The notes: generated by a model not told the origin, from the letters alone. A stretch of DNA of 64,000 nt from Euprymna scolopes (GCA_053919585.1 CM132798.1), one strand, 5' to 3'. Positions 47,165 to 64,000 are shown, numbered from the stretch's first letter. Translations and numbers: made by a program.

Positions 47165-47241
<77 letters not shown>

Positions 47242-47285
47242 CCACGCAAAAGTATTGGATACATTACATTTTCCTTCACAGCTCC

Positions 47286-47328
<43 letters not shown>

Positions 47329-47331
<3 letters not shown>

Positions 47332-47502
47332 ATTTATGAAATATATATGGCGATTAAGCTACACTGAATATTGGGCGTTTCATTCACTGTAGGATTCGTC
47401 AGGCTTATGCGCGAATTCTGTGGTTGTTTCTCGTTTTTGTATATGTTGAGGTTTTAGTTAGCCAATCAGCTTTCTAATATCAACCGCGCCCCTTCCTATA
47501 AG

Positions 47503-47507
<5 letters not shown>
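47329..47507 (-). mobile_element. Hammerhead-bearing short element (retrozyme or Penelope pseudo-LTR), copy A
   Basis: Homologous to 48034-48250; flanked on both sides by (TA)n. Confidence 0.8.
47350..47412 (-). ncRNA. Type I hammerhead ribozyme, copy A
   Basis: TAAGC-CTGACGA-ATCC tacagt GAAT-GAAA-CGCCCAATATTCAGTG-TA-GCTTA; core intact, one mismatch in stem II. Confidence 0.8.
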
Positions 47508-47574
<67 letters not shown>

Positions 47575-47787
47575 TATAGTAAATTATAAATTGGAATGTT
47601 ATTTCTATTATGACATGGCGNNNNNNNNNNNNNNNNNNNNNNNNNNNNNNNNNNNNNNNNNNNNNNNNNNNNNNNNNNNNNNNNNNNNNNNNNNNNNNNN
47701 NNNNNNNNNNNNNNNNNNNNNNNNNNNNNNNNNNNNNNNNNNNNNNNNNNNNNNNNNNNNNNNNNNNNNNNNNNNNNNGAGATGAAT

Positions 47788-47900
47788 CTATACTGAATAT
47801 TCCGTGTTTCATCCACTCTATACCTGAAGAACCCTAAAGTAGATTAAACGCGGAATGTTCAGTGTAGCCTAATCGCCATATATATTTTATAACTTGCTAT
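47788..47900 (+). mobile_element. Degenerate hammerhead element, copy B, preceded by an inverted half-copy
   Basis: CTGAAGA-ACCC taaagt AGAT-TAAA-CGCGGAATGTTCAGTG-TA-GCCTA from 47824; 47788-47820 is the reverse complement of the ribozyme 3' half. Confidence 0.75.
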
Positions 47901-47991
47901 CTCTATCTACGTATTGAGCACTGTTGAAGTAAATACGTAAATTGACGCATAAATTATACTCTCGTATACTATTTTATGTGAGGAAAGTTAG

Positions 47992-48033
<42 letters not shown>

Positions 48034-48036
<3 letters not shown>

Positions 48037-48250
48037 ATTTATGAAATATATATGGCGATTAAGCTACACTGAATATTCGGCGTTTCATCCACTCTAGGAT
48101 TCCTCAGGCTTATACGCGAATTCTGCGGTTGTTTATCGTTTTTATATGGTCCCCTTCTGTTGAGTATTTTGTGAGACAATCAGCTTTCTAATATCCACCG
48201 CGCCCCTTCCTATCAGCCAATGGGCATGCATTTTATCGGACAAAGGATCT
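48034..48250 (-). mobile_element. Hammerhead-bearing short element, copy C, with CCAAT/GC/TATA-like promoter
   Basis: - strand: ATTGG, GGGGCGCGG, GCTGATTG, TATAAAAA (about 48139-48146), then the ribozyme and a tail running into (TA)n. Confidence 0.8.
48055..48117 (-). ncRNA. Type I hammerhead ribozyme, copy C (best preserved)
   Basis: GCG-TA-TAAGC-CTGAGGA-ATCC tagagt GGAT-GAAA-CGCCGAATATTCAGTG-TA-GCTTA-AT-CGC; all three stems and all conserved core nucleotides present, GUA cleavage triplet. Confidence 0.88.
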
Positions 48251-48251
48251 G

Positions 48252-51200
48252 TTTTTTTTTGTTTTTTTTAATTACATTTTCACCCCAAACAAGGCAAATT
48301 GCCACTTTGGTGTAGGGGGCTACTATCAGGGGCAACAACTACTGGGGTACTATGTAGGGATTTGGGCAGCAATATATTGGTTCACGTTACACTTGAACTT
48401 CTGCACGTCAGTACTGTTGGGGAAGAAGGGACCTGGAATGGAATTCCAGAGTCTAGCGGTTCTGGAAAAGAAACTATTGGAGTAAAAAGATCCTTTCCAT
48501 ATAGAGATCTCTACAGTGTGAGGGTAGGATTAAGCAGCCTGTCGGGTTTGTCGAGGGTGCTCACGTCGTGGGGGCACAAGTTATTGCAGTTCGTCAGAGC
48601 ATTCACCACTAAATACTTGTAGAAAATTCAGAGGGATGAAACATTTCGTCCATGGGACCGAGGCTGAAGCTTATATGCCAGTTCAGGGCCTATCAGGTTT
48701 GTGACTCTCTTTTGAACCTTGTCAAGGAGCGAGAGACTAGTAGCAGATGCATCAACCCAGATGTAACAGCAATACTTCATATATTGGCGGATGGTGGCCT
48801 TATAGAGGTACAGGATACTGTCGGGTGGTAGAAGTTTTCTAGCACGGTAGAGAGAGCCCATCTTTCTTGCAGCGGCCCTGGCAATGCCTTCAATGTAATT
48901 GTTCCAACTCATGTTTCCTGTGAACGTAAGGTCAAGGTGTTTGAAAGATGGACTCTCAGATAAAGAGTCGTTGGCCATTGCTATGGGTGGTAGAGAGGGT
49001 TTCTTGTAATTATTGAATGAAACTAGTTTAGTCTTGGCAGCATTGGACGCGAACAACCACTTTTGTCCCCATTCCACTACAGATTGGAGGTCTTCCTCTA
49101 GTGTTTCTGCCATTTCTTTAGAAATGTGTTCATTCGTCTTCCTGTCGTGCCTGCCATAGAGTGTAGTGTCATCAGCATATATACCCATCTCAGAGGCAAT
49201 GTTGTCGGGGAGGTCATTTATGCATATCAGGAACAATAGAGGTCCAAGGATAGAACCCTGGGGCACCCCCGCATTTATATCATATTGTTTATATGTACGA
49301 CCGTCGAGGACAACCTGGATTTTTCTCTTATCTAAGAAGGATTTATGTTAAGTATTCTACCAGTGATACCGTATGATCTAATTTTCCTTAGGAGACCCTC
49401 ATGCCATACCCTGTCAAAAGCCTTACATATATCTAGACCTACCGCTCTGCCCTCCCCCGCTTTGCCCAGTGAATGATATATACGCTCAGAGATCACAGTT
49501 AGGATGTCTGCTGTGGAACGCGCTTGTCTAAATCCATATTGTTTGTTAGTCAGAAGTTTAGCATCTGTAAGGTAATGTACTAGACCATGGTTACTTTGGC
49601 AAAATGTGGGAGGAGGCTAATGGGGCGATAATTTCATGGGTAATTTCTTTCGCCAGAATTCTTGAATACTGGTAAAACAGAAGCAGTTTTCCAACAGCCT
49701 GGAAAGCAAGATTCATTAAGGCATTTGTTGCAGAGTTTGGAGAGAACTGGACCTACTTCGGTTGAGCACTTTTTTAATAGCACAGCTGAGATAAGATCGG
49801 GTCCACATGCTTTTGAAATGTCAAGGTTATTTACGATAGCAGGCACCAGACTAGTGGTGGTTTTCAGATCGTCTAGCGTGGCGTCTGTCCGCATAGGAAA
49901 GTCAGGTAGAGGAGGTTGTAAGGGTCCAGTGTGGAGTGTGAGGCAAATCGACTGACAAACATGTAAGCCTTGTCGGTTGCTGAGGAGACAACCTCCTGAT
50001 TGTTGGTTAGTGGGAGGATTGTTGATTGCCTATTATTTACTACACTGTTGTAGATCTTCCAGAATTCTCGAGTTCCTAGTTTTTGTGCGTCGATGCTCTT
50101 TTTAGTTGTTACCGTAAATTCTCTCTTAGCTTACGCTATTTCCTTCTAAACGTTATTTCTAGCTTCTATATACCTTAGTCTGTTTTAACTGGACATGTCG
50201 GTTAAACCTACGGTATGCATGCTGCTTTTAAGCAATGGCAGTTGCGCAAGTCGACGTAAACAATTGGGGAGAGTGGGGCTTGCTATAAAATTTCCGCATG
50301 GGAACATGCGCTTCGATTGCAGTTTTGAACCAGTCAGTGGTCTCGTTTGCACACTGTTCAGGACGAAGAGAAAAAATATTTCTCGATGGGGCATCTTTGA
50401 TTAGTTCTGTGATGGCTTCCCAGTCAGCCCTTTTATAATATAGCGTTGTTTTGAGAATTGGCTCTTCAGTTTTGGGTCTACAGTTTAGGGCGATTTCAAC
50501 CATTATCACTGCATGATCAGCATTCCGGAGTGGGCTGTGGGTCTGTGTTATGCAGTCATCGGGAACTGTGGTCAAAAACAGATCTAGAAGTGATGCGTGT
50601 TGTTCTTCCTGATCAGGGAAACGGGTTGGAAACGTAACAATGTGTGATAGGGAGTGAGATATAGTGAAGCTAGTAGGTGTGCTGCCCGCTGCATCTGTGT
50701 AAGTAGAGAATCCAGGACAGTTTTTGTGGTTGACATTAAAGTCACAAAATACATGTATTTGTGTGCTAGTGTCGAGGGACAGTCCCGTGTCTATGCTATC
50801 AGAGGCTTTGTCAATTATGGTGTAGTCCTGAGTTTAGGGAGAGCGGTAGAGAAAATAATAGTTGCTAATATTGTGCTGCATGTTTAGTCTACAGCCCATA
50901 AAGGCTTGATCATCTGTTTCTAGGTTTGTTTCTCTAGTCAGGGGGAAGGTATTACGAATGTAAACTCCAAGTCCGTGCATATGTCTGTCAGATTGCTTAG
51001 GCAGAGTGAGATATATCCAGGCATGTTAAAGTGGTAATAGGGGATGGAGGAGTGTAGGTTAGTCTCACTTAGTGCTAAGATATCCGGGGTATTTGTTAAG
51101 AGAAATGCTTGAACATCAGTTAAATTAGATCTAAGCCCACGGATATTTGTGAATGCGAGCGTCAAGGGAGGAGGCAAGTTGAATTTGTTTGCCCCTAAGC

Positions 51201-60425: not shown

Positions 60426-60504
60426 ATACATATATACACACAAACACACAGAAATATACACGGTGCTAGTTGGCCGTCGACCCAGAAACAGAGTTAATTC
60501 GCCT

Positions 60505-61098
60505 ATATATATACATACATATATGTGTGATCGTTTATGTATACTCATGTTTTATAATTTATTTATTTTTTATTTTCTATTGTTTTTGTTAGTTTGAAAA
60601 CTATTTTGTATCGCTATCCTAGAGTGAATTTTATTTCATGCACACAGTTATTTGCTATTTCTCTTCTACAATTTAATAGATGTTGGGGTTCTTTAAAGTA
60701 CAGGATAGCACATTTTCATGAAGGCATAATCTACATGGGTCGTTTAGATGCCTACATGTGGTAGCTTGTCTTATTATTTTCCATTCGACTACCAGCGAAT
60801 GTCCGCTTTATTTGGGTTCCCAATATTTATTCGCTAGTGTTGTTTTTATACGGTGTTTCTTACGGTTAAATGTACATTTGTAGCCATAGTATCGGGTTTT
60901 GAAATCTAAGGAAATCATACCTACGTAATATTTCTTGTTATTCGGGGGTTCTTTCGCAACTATTGTGGCTTGATAAACTTCGCTTTTAATTAGACATTTA
61001 TTTTGAACTGGGCAAAGTGTGCGGTGTCTACAGTTGCATCTATCTTGTTCATTATTAATATTTTTATTTATAGTATGGTTGTTCTTGTCCGGGATTGG

Positions 61099-61167
<69 letters not shown>

Positions 61168-61625
61168 TCTGCTAGTGTTTGTTTTATTTTTGTCTTGGTG
61201 TTTATTTTTTATTGTTTATTTTGTTGTTATTTACATTGTTTTTATTTAATATTTTTATTATTATGTGCTTTAATTATTATCTCTAAATTTTCGCAAGCAC
61301 TGTAGGTTTAGTTTAAGTTATTTTTATTGAAGATTTTCTGTAAGGGGTTGGTTGCGGGAAAGTGTTTGTCAAATAGATCTAGAAATTTCTTGCCAAGTTT
61401 TGTTTTTAACATTTGATTTTATGGGGCCGTATACCAAATTATAATTCTTTTTCTTCTGTTTTAATGTTATTATAGTTATTGGTGTTTTTTTTGCTTATAT
61501 TTGATATCGATATTTTTGTATCCACTATTTTTTGGGATGTTTCGTAGATATTGGTTGACCTGTTAAATGCATTTTTTTTGCTTAAGTTATTACTGGGTCT
61601 ACTAACGATCGAGTTAGGAATGTGT
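60505..61625 (-). mobile_element. Inverted 3' segment of the Penelope-like (Naiad-type) element
   Basis: Reverse complement of about 63005-63975 including the GIY-YIG region and an internal (TAA)n tract. Confidence 0.92.
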
Positions 61626-61679
61626 CGTATATTAATTTTATGTGAGTAAATGAAGTAGTTATACTTAGCTCCTTAAACA

Positions 61680-63326
61680 GTCGAGCACTCTCAAAAGAAT
61701 TTATTTTACCACATTAAAAATAGATATGGAAAGAGTTAATTTCGAAACATCGCTAAAAAACATCCCCACAGACAGCAAGCATAGCTATATTATTAAATTA
61801 ATAAAAAAAAACAGACGAACTAATACGCTGAATAAGATGGCGAGCAAATGTCTTCCTTAAAAATGAAAGCGTAAACAAAAAAGCATCCTATGATTTTAAA
61901 ACCCTTAAATATGCGAAAACAGTAGACCTTTTGATAAACTTTGAAAATGACATTTTAAACGTAATTAAAAACGTAAAATTCCACAATCAACCTAACAATT
62001 TCCAACGGAAACTACACAAAATCGTTAAAAACATAAACAACTCTAATAAAATCTTTGTAAAAGCAGATAAAACTAGACAGTTTTATAAAATAGATAAGCA
62101 AGAATATTACAAACTAATCCCAGAAAACATTACAAAAAGCTACAAAAAACTAGACACAAACGAATGTGACTACATAGATATAATAAATACTGAAAGTAAA
62201 CAAATTACTGATAAATTAAAAATTAGCGATAAAGTTGGCAAATTCAAACCTAGAGAGGCATACATTATGCTTAAAGCCCACAAATGGGACTTTAATAATA
62301 ATCCCAGCATCCGCCTGATAAATCAAACTAAACCAGTAGAATTAGCAAACCAATACTTTCTAGAGTAAAAAAAACAAATCAAACAAAACCTATTATTAAA
62401 CAAGTGGGCAAATACTGAAGAAACTGGTTTAAAAATATAGAAAACAAAGATAAATGTACTTTTATACAGTTTTACATCATAGACATTTATCCCTCGATAT
62501 GTGAGGAACTTTTAACATTGCCCTAGAATTTGCCGAGGCATACACTGATATATTCTCGGAAGAAATCAACATCGTTAAAAAATGTAGAAAATCAGTTCTA
62601 ATAAATAACAATAACCAATGGATAAAAACTAAAATGAAAATTCGTTTGATTTGGCGATGGGTGCCAAGGATTCTGCAGAGGCATCAGATCTTGTGGGATT
62701 ATTCATTCTATATACCCTCACAAGCATATTCGATACTATGGATATCGGCCTATATAAAGATGACGCACTAGCTTTAATAATAAAAAAACTACAACAAAGT
62801 CAAGGGAGAAAACTTTAAGAAAATCATACACAAGGAAATGAAAAAAAAATAGGCCTAAAAGCAGACGTATAAGCTAACATAAAAATAACAAACTTCCTGG
62901 ACGTCACGTTAAATTTAGATAAAAACAAGTATGAACCCTACTAAAAAAGATAACGCTACTGCAATTTACGTAAACCCTAAGTCCAACCACCCACCATCAG
63001 TTATAAAACACATTCCTAACTCGATCGTAAGTAGACTCAGTAATAACTCAAGCGACGAAAATGCATTAAACAGGTCAACCAATACCTATGAAACAACCCT
63101 AAAAATAGTGGATACAAAACTATCGATATCAAATATAAGCAACAAAACACCAATAACTATAATAAAATTAAAAATAGAAGAAAAAGAACAATAATTTGGT
63201 ATATGGCCCCATACAATCAAATGTTAAAAAAAAAACTTGCCAAGAAATTTCTAGATCTTATTGAAAAACACTTTCCCGCAACCAACCCCTTACACAAAAT
63301 CTTCAATAAAAACTAACACTAGCAGA

Positions 63327-63363
<37 letters not shown>

Positions 63364-63975
63364 TAATAATAATAATAATAAACCAACCCTTGACAAGAAC
63401 AACCATACTATAAATAAAAATACTAATAACGAACAAGATAAATGCAGCTGTAGACACCGCACACTTTGCCCAGTTCAAAATAAATGTCTAATTAAAAGTG
63501 TCGTTTATCAAGCCACAACAGTTGCGAAATAAAACCCGAATAACAAGAAATATTACGTAGGCATGACTTCCTTAGATTTCAAAAACCGATACTATGACCA
63601 CAAAAGTACATTCAGCCGTAAGAAACACCGTATAAAAACAACACTCGCGTATAAATACTGGGAACCCAAATAAAGCGGACACTCGCCGGTCGTCGAATGG
63701 AAAATAATAAGACAAGCTACCACGTGTAGGCATCTAGACGACCCATGTAGATTATGCCTTCATGAAAAATGTGCTATCCTGTACTTTAAAGAACCCCAAC
63801 ATCTATTACACTGTAGAAGAGAAATAGCAAATAACTGTGTTCACAAAAAAGACATTACTCAAGGATAGCGATACAAAATAGTTTTCAAACTAACAAAAAC
63901 AATAGAAAATAAAAATAAATAAATTATAAAACATGAGTATACATAAACGATCACACATATGTGTATATATATATG
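61680..63975 (+). mobile_element. Penelope-like element, Naiad-type, near-complete RT plus GIY-YIG pseudogene
   Basis: ATG 61726 MERVNFETSLKNIP, IRWRA, FENDI, VKADKT, YPSI, MGAKDSAEASDLVGL, GLYKDDAL, NFLDVTL, SNHPP, CSC-x5-C-x5-C, VVYQA..YYVGMT..FKNRY..H, CRLCLHEK; several frameshifts and stops. Confidence 0.9.
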
Positions 63976-64000
63976 TATATATATGTGCATATATGTATGT

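What the first reader, a model, noticed from the sequence alone, without database searches (positions are those of the whole stretch)
47329..48250. Cluster of (TA)n-embedded mini-elements carrying a complete type I hammerhead ribozyme: candidate new retrozyme family
Seen: three copies plus an inverted half-copy within 1 kb. Copy C (48055-48117, - strand) has CUGAGGA and GAAA boxes, stem II AUCC/GGAU with a 6-nt loop, stem I UAAGC/GCUUA extended by a 2x2 internal loop and GCG/CGC, and a GUA cleavage site. Within the CUGANGA box only the free N7 position differs among copies (C, A, G). Stem III is long and near-palindromic around GAATATTC, so it could pair within one RNA or between two. Known: hammerheads occur in Penelope pseudo-LTRs and non-coding retrozymes, and stem I/loop II contacts speed cleavage. 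Inference: a self-cleaving non-coding mobile RNA copied by a Penelope RT with a preference for TA microsatellites.
Basis: partly seen in the sequence, partly recalled or inferred. Interest (0 to 1): 0.85.

Follow-up and report, generated by a model that had tools for sequence, protein, structure and literature searches.

The report
Truncated Penelope-like element ends with hammerhead
The small repeats sitting in a TA microsatellite are broken-off tail ends of a very abundant, protein-coding Penelope-like jumping gene of a mollusc, and the hammerhead-ribozyme-like motif they carry belongs to that element's 3' untranslated region, so this is an ordinary example of a known kind rather than a new ribozyme-based mobile RNA.

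Summary
The sequence features are real. Copy C (48055-48117, minus strand) has a full type I hammerhead layout, and it is the only hit of a hammerhead descriptor in the 64-kb window. Copy A has a broken stem II. Copy B is a head-to-head hairpin with G12 mutated and no 5' strand of stem I.

The copies are not an independent non-coding family. They are the 3' ends of a ~2.9-kb retroelement with variable 5' truncation:
- The element has a single 761-764-aa ORF.
- It carries the RWK/RWR, DKT, CxCX5C, CxxC and CxH motifs.
- It inserts into (TA)n and has two alternative 3' ends (a 121-nt "tail").
- It shows tandem pseudo-LTR and inverted arrangements.

These features match the published "Hydra" clade of Penelope-like elements, whose members are reported to carry hammerheads.

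The 3'-end motif occurs about 97,000 times in this 5.9-Gb mollusc genome. A near-full-length copy lies in the same window (61662-63998).

The hammerhead departs from canon: A10.1-U11.1 and a long helix III. Rfam misses it. There is no real covariation, and RNA reads show no ends at the predicted cut.

Earlier notes of this scan describe similar Penelope-derived hammerhead elements on other DNA of this genome. Verdict: a new member of a known kind, of low interest.

The parts
47165..47238 (.). (TA)n tract, first of four that frame the insertions
47290..47328 (.). (TA)n tract at the 3' side of copy A
47329..47507 (-). Copy A: 5'-truncated 3' end of the PLE (element positions 2661-2844, 90% identical to the intact copy in L046). 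It has CUGACGA, stem II broken by a C.A mismatch, and ends at 3' site 1.
47508..47578 (.). (TA)n tract between copy A and copy B
47579..47620 (-). Copy B, left (inverted) arm: diverged 3' terminus of the element, running into the assembly gap
   Evidence: compared with family copies
47621..47778 (.). Assembly gap (N). Its flanks meet in family coordinates. Continuity is unknown and the gap was not filled.
47779..47822 (-). Copy B, left arm continued: antisense of the stem I 3' strand, stem III, GAAA and part of stem II
47823..47897 (+). Copy B, right arm: degenerate hammerhead (CUGAAGA at 47824-47830, G12 changed to U, no stem I 5' strand) and 3' site 1
47898..47995 (+). Optional 'tail' of the element (the sequence between the two alternative 3' ends), attached to copy B
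47996..48033 (.). (TA)n tract between copy B and copy C
48034..48255 (-). Copy C: 5'-truncated 3' end of the PLE (element positions 2627-2844). It is 94-95% identical to an abundant subfamily.
48055..48117 (-). Hammerhead-like motif of copy C. All core nucleotides are present, with A10.1-U11.1. The predicted cut lies between 48065 and 48064.
60504..61631 (-). Inverted 5'-truncated copy of the same PLE (element positions 1348-2465), head to head with the next part
61662..63998 (+). Near-full-length copy of the same PLE (element positions 1-2486, 88-92% identical). It runs off the end of the window.

Best explanation
The cluster is a set of separate dead-on-arrival insertions of one very abundant Hydra-clade Penelope-like element (PLE) into a (TA)n microsatellite.

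**Shown:**
- Copies A and C are 5'-truncated 3' ends of the element.
- Copy B is a head-to-head inverted pair of such ends, and it carries the optional tail.
- The hammerhead-like motif lies in the element's 3' UTR. Its predicted cut is 31 nt before the first of two alternative 3' ends, so any copy longer than about 100 nt carries the motif.
- The element, its ORF, the variable 5' truncation, the two 3' ends, the (TA)n flanks and the tandem and inverted arrangements are all seen directly in the sequence.

**Inferred from published PLE biology:**
- The element's GIY-YIG nuclease nicks (TA)n.
- Its telomerase-like RT starts cDNA synthesis at one of two internal sites near the RNA's 3' end.
- It often stops early or switches template at short self-complementary words. 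This gives the truncated and hairpin copies.

**Inferred only, about 55% likely:** the motif self-cleaves transcripts that read through tandem copies.
For: **Abundance**
- More than 2,378 candidate copies of the 192-nt end were found. The 40 that were scored are 93-100% identical.
- The 28-nt 3' half of the motif occurs 96,736 times at up to 2 mismatches.

**Copies are truncated ends of a coding element**
- 5' ends of 30 copies are scattered over element positions ~1100-2635, all collinear with a coding element.
- Intact ORFs of 761 and 764 aa are present. They carry RWR, ADKT, YRDDGL, CNCRHRTLC (CxCX5C), VVYQA/YYIGMT, CKLC..E and N..CVH.
- A 57-sequence alignment has D114/K115, the CxCX5C cysteines, the CxxC cysteines, E728, N743, C752 and H754 invariant, W38 nearly invariant, and RWK in its consensus.

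**Protein folds**
- The AlphaFold model has pLDDT 87. Its best PDB matches are telomerase RTs (3du5, E 2e-8), followed by other RTs.
- GIY-YIG (PF01541) scores E 0.0019 on the C-terminal 162 aa, below Pfam's cut-off.

**Match to the published clade**
- These are the features listed for the Hydra clade: under 3 kb, DKT, RWK, CxCX5C, (TA)n insertion and hammerheads present (PMC8557442 section 11).

**Architecture of the copies**
- The two 3' ends, 121 nt apart, are used 15:15 in 30 copies. This matches the PLE 'tail' signature explained by internal RT initiation (PMC11167929).
- Tandem pseudo-LTR arrangement occurs in 4 of 11 near-full-length copies. Inverted upstream copies are seen.
- About 40 of the first 100 genomic hits lie in head-to-head pairs.

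**The hammerhead motif**
- It is the only CUGANGA...GAAA core on either strand of the element.
- All variants shared between subfamilies fall at N7, loop 2, the stem I internal loop or the stem III mismatch, or keep the pair (A-U to G-U at 10.1).

**Expression**
- RNA libraries of a mollusc hold the element. Depth is 3'-biased, and raw reads over the ORF are mostly sense.
Against: - Pfam and NCBIfam recognise no RT in the ORF. GIY-YIG is below Pfam's cut-off.
- I could not place the RT in a tree with reference Hydra sequences.
- Rfam does not recognise the hammerhead in any copy.
- It lacks the highly conserved G10.1-C11.1 pair.
- There is no real covariation: only two double changes, both in one old copy and both in CpG context.
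- No RNA ends pile up at the predicted cut.
- Two distant relatives from metagenomes show no clean motif with my descriptor.
Confidence: 0.88

Rival explanations
1. Independent non-coding retrozyme family. In this view a short hammerhead RNA of its own is transcribed, self-cleaved, perhaps circularised, and copied in trans by a PLE RT into (TA)n.
For: - Very short copies such as A (179 nt) exist and are flanked by (TA)n on both sides.
- Animal retrozymes are thought to derive from PLE pseudo-LTRs (bioRxiv 10.64898/2026.07.22.740005).
- One internally deleted derivative was seen in L023.
Against: - There is no fixed unit length. 5' ends form a scattered series into the ORF.
- There is no head-to-tail array with a constant period, unlike the 410-bp arrays with canonical hammerheads elsewhere in this genome.
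- Sequence is the same as the coding element's 3' UTR.
- No circular-junction or cut-site signal appears in reads.
Confidence: 0.05
2. The hammerhead-like motif is catalytically dead or incidental. It would be kept because this 3' UTR segment is a structure that the RT recognises to start reverse transcription, not because it cuts RNA.
For: - A10.1-U11.1 replaces the highly conserved G-C pair (PMC4209133).
- Rfam is silent and there is no covariation.
- No RNA ends fall at the cut site.
- Hammerhead cleavage is dispensable for PLE insertion in vitro, and no reads ended at the cut site in Anolis either (PMC11167929).
- The 568 head-to-head junctions at the cut site can be explained by microhomology alone.
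Against: - Every one of the 13 core nucleotides is present, with the right topology and helix sizes: helix I of 5 bp plus an internal loop, and helix II of 4 bp plus a 6-nt loop.
- About 0.001 such motifs are expected by chance per 3-kb sense strand.
- Subfamily differences avoid core and paired positions.
- Hammerheads are reported as universal in this clade.
Confidence: 0.35
3. Local duplication: the three copies arose by segmental or tandem duplication of one insertion together with its microsatellite, not by separate insertions.
For: The copies lie within 1 kb of each other and all abut (TA)n.
Against: - The copies belong to different subfamilies and have different truncation points and 3' ends.
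- A has CUGACGA, is 90% identical to the intact type, and covers element 2661-2844.
- C has CUGAGGA, is 95% identical to another subfamily, and covers element 2627-2844.
- B is a hairpin with a tail and is 82% identical.
Confidence: 0.03

Closest known systems
Hydra clade of C-terminal-endonuclease Penelope-like elements (Craig, Yushenova, Rodriguez and Arkhipova 2021, PMC8557442)
   Same: - Element shorter than 3 kb with a single ORF.
- RT followed by a C-terminal GIY-YIG nuclease.
- RWK-type and DKT motifs, a CxCX5C linker, and CxxC and CxH around the conserved E and N.
- Insertion into (TA)n.
- A hammerhead motif near the 3' end, and tandem and inverted arrangements.
- The clade is reported in molluscs.
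   Different: - The hammerhead is not 'canonical': it has A10.1-U11.1 and a 6-7-bp helix III, and it is invisible to Rfam.
- The tail is 121 nt rather than the usual 30-40.
- Copy number is very high, with about 97,000 3' ends.
- Clade membership rests on motifs, not on a tree.
Metazoan non-LTR retrozymes (Cervera and de la Pena 2020, PMC7229834)
   Same: Type I hammerhead layout, non-coding short copies, and a likely dependence on a PLE RT.
   Different: - Retrozymes are head-to-tail arrays of 150-450-bp monomers of constant length. They carry canonical hammerheads and yield circular RNA.
- Here lengths vary, there is no array, and copies are collinear with a coding element.
- Real retrozyme-type arrays (410-bp period, GCCC/GGGC helix II, ACUCGAGU helix III) occur elsewhere in this genome.
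Minimal hammerheads in PLE pseudo-LTRs (Cervera and de la Pena 2014, PMC4209133)
   Same: - The motif sits in the terminal repeat of a PLE.
- Most genomic copies are single motifs in truncated elements.
- Pairs on opposite strands 100-700 bp apart are common.
- Helix III is palindromic.
   Different: - Those motifs have almost no helix III, must act as dimers, keep G10.1-C11.1 and carry an extra base after A9.
- This motif has a helix III long enough to fold as a monomer, and an A-U pair at 10.1-11.1.
Poseidon PLE of Anolis carolinensis, studied in vitro (Frangieh et al. 2024, PMC11167929)
   Same: - Two alternative RT start sites internal to the RNA explain an optional 'tail' at the 3' end of genomic copies.
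- No RNA-seq ends are seen at the hammerhead cut site.
   Different: It belongs to a different clade. Its tail is 30-40 nt. Its hammerhead overlaps the start of the ORF rather than lying in the 3' UTR.

Membership tests
Hammerhead ribozyme, type I | Core nucleotides C3 U4 G5 A6 N7 G8 A9, G12 A13 A14, the A15.1-U16.1 pair, and H17 not G | tested here: met
   Met in copy C and in most family copies. Not met in copy B, where G12 is U. Copy A keeps the core but has a broken helix II.
Hammerhead ribozyme, type I | Three helices around the core, with helix I open (both ends of the RNA in helix I) | tested here: met
   The MFE fold of 48052-48118 (minus) is exactly this junction, and the descriptor hits it.
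Hammerhead ribozyme, type I | G10.1-C11.1 pair at the base of helix II (highly conserved, not absolute) | tested here: not met
   The pair is A-U in nearly all copies and G-U in a minor subfamily. PMC4209133 calls G10.1-C11.1 highly conserved.
Hammerhead ribozyme, type I | Score at or above the Rfam gathering threshold for RF00163 or its clan | tested here: not met
   No hit at gathering score or at E<=10. The same model finds other hammerheads in this genome at up to 57 bits.
Hammerhead ribozyme, type I | Compensatory changes in the helices | tested here: inconclusive
   97% of cells are paired. Only 2 double changes occur, both in one decayed copy. The family is too young to be informative.
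Hammerhead ribozyme, type I | Site-specific self-cleavage | not testable with these tools
   Reads show no ends at the site. Junction counts are ambiguous.
Hydra-clade Penelope-like element | Short element (<3 kb) with one ORF: RT followed by a C-terminal GIY-YIG nuclease | tested here: met
   The element is ~2.9 kb with ORFs of 761/764 aa. The model's best PDB matches are telomerase RTs. GIY-YIG scores E 0.0019, below Pfam's cut-off.
Hydra-clade Penelope-like element | RWK motif, DKT in place of DKG, CxCX5C linker, and CxxC and CxH around the conserved E and N | tested here: met
   Read directly in the ORFs and in the 57-sequence alignment, and compared with PMC8557442 section 11.
Hydra-clade Penelope-like element | Absence of the CCHH motif inside the nuclease domain | not tested
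   I had no reference alignment of other PLE nucleases to locate the CCHH positions.
Hydra-clade Penelope-like element | Insertion into (TA)n | tested here: met
   Nearly all 3' ends, and many 5' ends, abut (TA)n.
Hydra-clade Penelope-like element | PLE architecture: pseudo-LTR tandems, inverted 5'-truncated copies, and an optional tail | tested here: met
Hydra-clade Penelope-like element | Phylogenetic placement of the RT with reference Hydra families | not tested
   No reference sequences were available, and the paper's supplements are not held.
Metazoan non-LTR retrozyme | Head-to-tail arrays of non-coding monomers of constant length (150-450 bp), each with a hammerhead | tested here: not met
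   Lengths vary, orientations are mixed, copies are separated by (TA)n, and all are collinear with a coding element.
Metazoan non-LTR retrozyme | Unit-length linear and circular RNA | tested here: inconclusive
   No listed joint matches a unit-length circle and no cut-site ends appear in four runs. The libraries are unsuited to small non-polyadenylated RNA.

The most novel reading that the evidence does not exclude
The non-canonical hammerhead (A10.1-U11.1, monomer-stable helix III) is active in vivo and sets the 5' end of the element's RNA. On this reading, two observations are genomic fossils of cDNAs that ran off a self-cleaved RNA. The first is the 568 head-to-head junctions centred exactly on the predicted cut site. 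The second is a full-length copy (L042) that starts exactly at G1.1.
Probability: 0.2. Interest if true: 0.4.

Novelty: new member of a known kind. Interest (0 to 1): 0.2.

Why it matters
It matters little beyond annotation. Three points are still useful:
- It documents a Hydra-clade Penelope-like element that has reached about 97,000 3'-end copies in a large mollusc genome.
- Its hammerhead variant escapes Rfam, so model-based censuses of ribozymes undercount such elements.
- Short hammerhead-bearing repeats in TA microsatellites should first be checked against coding PLEs before being called retrozymes.

The microhomology pattern of the head-to-head junctions may be of use to people studying how the PLE RT switches templates.

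Tried and rejected
1. **Rfam** at gathering score and at E<=10 on the window, on a 111-nt stretch and on three full-length loci. No hammerhead was found at the site.

2. **Own-genome DNA search with the 5' part of the 3' UTR.** It returned nothing, probably because very common words are skipped.

3. **Pfam and NCBIfam on the ORF, and phmmer against PDB.** Pfam and NCBIfam gave no hit on the whole ORF. phmmer gave only a low-complexity hit.

4. **Distant relatives from metagenomes (L049-L051, L062, L063), to look for covariation between families**.
 - My descriptor found no clean hit.
 - L062 has a core (CUGAUGA...GAAA, then CUCGAG) right after its stop codon, with extra bases.
 - L063 has a (TA)-disrupted remnant.
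 - One contig had no DNA available.

5. **Covariation count.** No support.

6. **RNA reads.** No pile-up of ends at the cut site. The loose ends at L046 2292/2293 are a subfamily indel in loop 2, not cleavage.

7. **Genomic record of cleavage, from counts of head-to-head junctions**.
 - 568 junctions are centred on AGCU at the cut site.
 - Blunt junctions at neighbouring positions number 1-7.
 - 93 are centred on UUAA and 170 on GAAUAUUC.
 - A far more common class of pairs, 102-104 nt apart, would place the junction near the CGCG word by my arithmetic on the spacing (one search list); I did not read those sequences.
 - Junctions therefore follow short self-complementary words, which explains the peak without cleavage. 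I rejected this as proof.

8. **5' ends of near-full-length copies.** Of the seven without an upstream pseudo-LTR, only one starts exactly at G1.1. The others start at -7, +12, +102, +135, +138 and +191.

Full report
**Observation**

The region 47165-48255 holds four (TA)n tracts with repeat copies between them.

Copy C on the minus strand has every element of a type I hammerhead:
- helix I of 5 bp, a 2x2 internal loop and 3 further bp;
- CUGAGGA at 48101-48107;
- helix II AUCC/GGAU with a 6-nt loop;
- GAAA at 48083-48086;
- an 18-nt helix III around GAAUAUUC;
- GUA, with the predicted cut between 48065 and 48064.

Its minimum-free-energy fold is this junction, though it is not unusually stable (z -1.2). 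A descriptor scan of both strands of the whole window finds only this site. Shuffled windows give 0.05 hits each.

Copy A (47329-47507) keeps the boxes but has a C.A mismatch in helix II. Copy B has CUGAAGA at 47824-47830 on the plus strand, UAAA for GAAA, and no 5' strand of helix I, because an inverted arm begins there.

Rfam reports no hammerhead here at any threshold I could set.

The assembly gap lies inside the left arm of copy B. Its two sides meet in family coordinates, so nothing need be missing.

**What the copies are**

The 192-nt end of copy C has more than 2,378 candidate matches in the 5.9-Gb genome. The 40 that were scored are 93-100% identical.

Upstream, conservation continues for different distances in different copies. 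Downstream, copies end either at ...ATAAATTAC or 121 nt later, and (TA)n follows in nearly every case.

Longer fetches lead into reading-frame pieces of a nuclease and an RT. A search with the RT piece gave 17,721 candidates and open frames of up to 780 aa.

Two intact copies encode 761 and 764 aa. One such element has this layout:
- a 64-nt 5' UTR;
- the ORF;
- a ~490-nt 3' UTR, with the hammerhead-like motif near its end and the predicted cut 31 nt before 3' end number one;
- an optional 121-nt tail;
- (TA)n on both sides;
- an inverted 5'-truncated copy upstream.

In element coordinates, the 5' ends of 30 copies chosen only for likeness to copy C lie anywhere from ~1100 to 2635. The two 3' ends are used 15:15.

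Window copies A, B and C map to element positions 2661-2844, 2767-2965 and 2627-2844. The window also holds a near-full-length copy at 61662-63998 with an inverted partner at 60504-61631.

**Which family**

Pfam and NCBIfam see nothing in the whole ORF. GIY-YIG appears below threshold on the C-terminal 162 aa (E 0.0019).

A search of public proteins gave 1,140 relatives of 700-750 aa at 38-47% identity. Most come from marine samples, and one comes from the bivalve Solemya velum.

Their alignment shows RWK in its consensus, with W38 nearly invariant. Invariant columns include D114/K115 of the DKT motif, the CxCX5C cysteines, the CxxC cysteines, E728, N743, C752 and H754.

The AlphaFold model built on that alignment is confident (pLDDT 87). 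Its best PDB matches are telomerase catalytic subunits, followed by other RTs.

Craig et al. 2021 define the Hydra clade of PLEs by just these traits:
- under 3 kb with a single ORF;
- a C-terminal GIY-YIG nuclease;
- RWK, DKT and CxCX5C motifs, and CxxC and CxH around E and N;
- almost all families inserted in (TA)n;
- hammerheads present throughout;
- hosts that include molluscs.

The two 3' ends match the PLE 'tail' signature, which Frangieh et al. 2024 traced to two internal RT start sites.

Tandem pseudo-LTR arrangements occur in 4 of 11 near-full-length copies. Head-to-head pairs make up about 40 of the first 100 genomic hits.

Run labels and earlier notes point to a mollusc.

**The hammerhead itself**

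It is the only CUGANGA...GAAA core on either strand of the element. It sits where PLE hammerheads are expected.

Variants shared between subfamilies fall at N7, in loop 2 (one substitution and one indel), at the first base of the helix I internal loop, and at the mismatched base of helix III. One further variant changes A10.1 to G and keeps a G-U pair. With 17 free positions out of 63, this pattern is mildly non-random (about p 0.02 by my own count).

Against activity:
- The pair at 10.1-11.1 is A-U, not the highly conserved G-C.
- Rfam misses every copy.
- The helices show no real covariation.
- Four RNA runs, one of them raw reads, show no ends at the cut site. The same negative result was reported for Anolis.

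**A test that looked promising**

A full-length copy (L042) begins exactly at G1.1 behind an inverted 31-nt copy of itself. L023 joins ORF sequence directly to G1.1.

Genome-wide counts of head-to-head junctions are:
- 568 centred on the cut site;
- 1-7 for blunt junctions one to three bases away;
- 93 centred on UUAA;
- 170 centred on GAAUAUUC.

The commonest pairs, 102-104 nt apart, would place the junction near the CGCG word by my arithmetic on the spacing; I did not read those sequences. Junctions therefore track short self-complementary words, and the cut site happens to be AGCU. This does not prove cleavage.

**Comparison and verdict**

Classical retrozymes do exist in this genome. They form 410-bp head-to-tail arrays with hammerheads that Rfam scores at up to 57 bits. 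They are unrelated to the window's copies.

The window cluster is a set of truncated and hairpin ends of a coding Hydra-clade PLE.

It is a new member of a known kind, with a hammerhead variant that standard models miss. Earlier notes of this scan reached similar verdicts for other Penelope-derived hammerhead elements on other DNA of this genome.

Noticed in passing
window 60504-63998: A near-full-length copy of the same Penelope-like element lies at 61662-63998 on the plus strand and runs off the window. It is head to head with an inverted 5'-truncated copy at 60504-61631.
   Followed up: partly
L056-L061 (G000:C8:10432194-10435515) and G000:C3:89840417-89842627: Head-to-tail arrays with a ~410-bp period. 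Each unit has a canonical type I hammerhead (GUCUAA CUGAUGA GCCC..GGGC GAA ACUCGAGU C) scoring 48-53 bits with Rfam RF00163. These are classical retrozyme-type repeats, unrelated to the window's copies.
   Followed up: partly
L048 7826-7869 (minus): A second, different hammerhead motif (CCGCA CUGAUGA GUUGU-GAU-ACAAC GAA ACAUUACUGU A UGUGG) with a G-C pair at 10.1-11.1. Rfam gives only a weak Hammerhead_3 hit (22.7 bits, E 1). It probably belongs to another element family.
   Followed up: no
G000 genome-wide: Head-to-head junctions between inverted copies are rare when blunt (1-7 loci). They are frequent at short self-complementary words: AGCU 568, GAAUAUUC 170 and UUAA 93. Many pairs lie 102-104 nt apart, which by spacing alone would put the junction near CGCG. 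This suggests microhomology-guided template switching by the element's RT.
   Followed up: partly
L023 (oriented) 1694-2190: An internally deleted derivative: the 3' end, then the 5' UTR and about 340 nt of ORF, joined directly to the 31-nt terminus that starts at the predicted cut site, followed by the tail.
   Followed up: partly
L062 3613-3750 and 1001-1110: A distant relative (41% protein identity, from an environmental assembly) has a hammerhead-like core right after its stop codon. Its 3' UTR is only ~115 nt and ends in (TA)n, and an inverted copy of that UTR lies upstream of the ORF.
   Followed up: partly
L046 7032-7961 (minus): A 309-aa ORF with the look of a non-LTR (LINE-type) reverse transcriptase lies next to the Penelope-like element.
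   Followed up: no
window 47239-47289: A 51-nt stretch between two (TA)n tracts matches no part of the element. It may be original target DNA.
   Followed up: no
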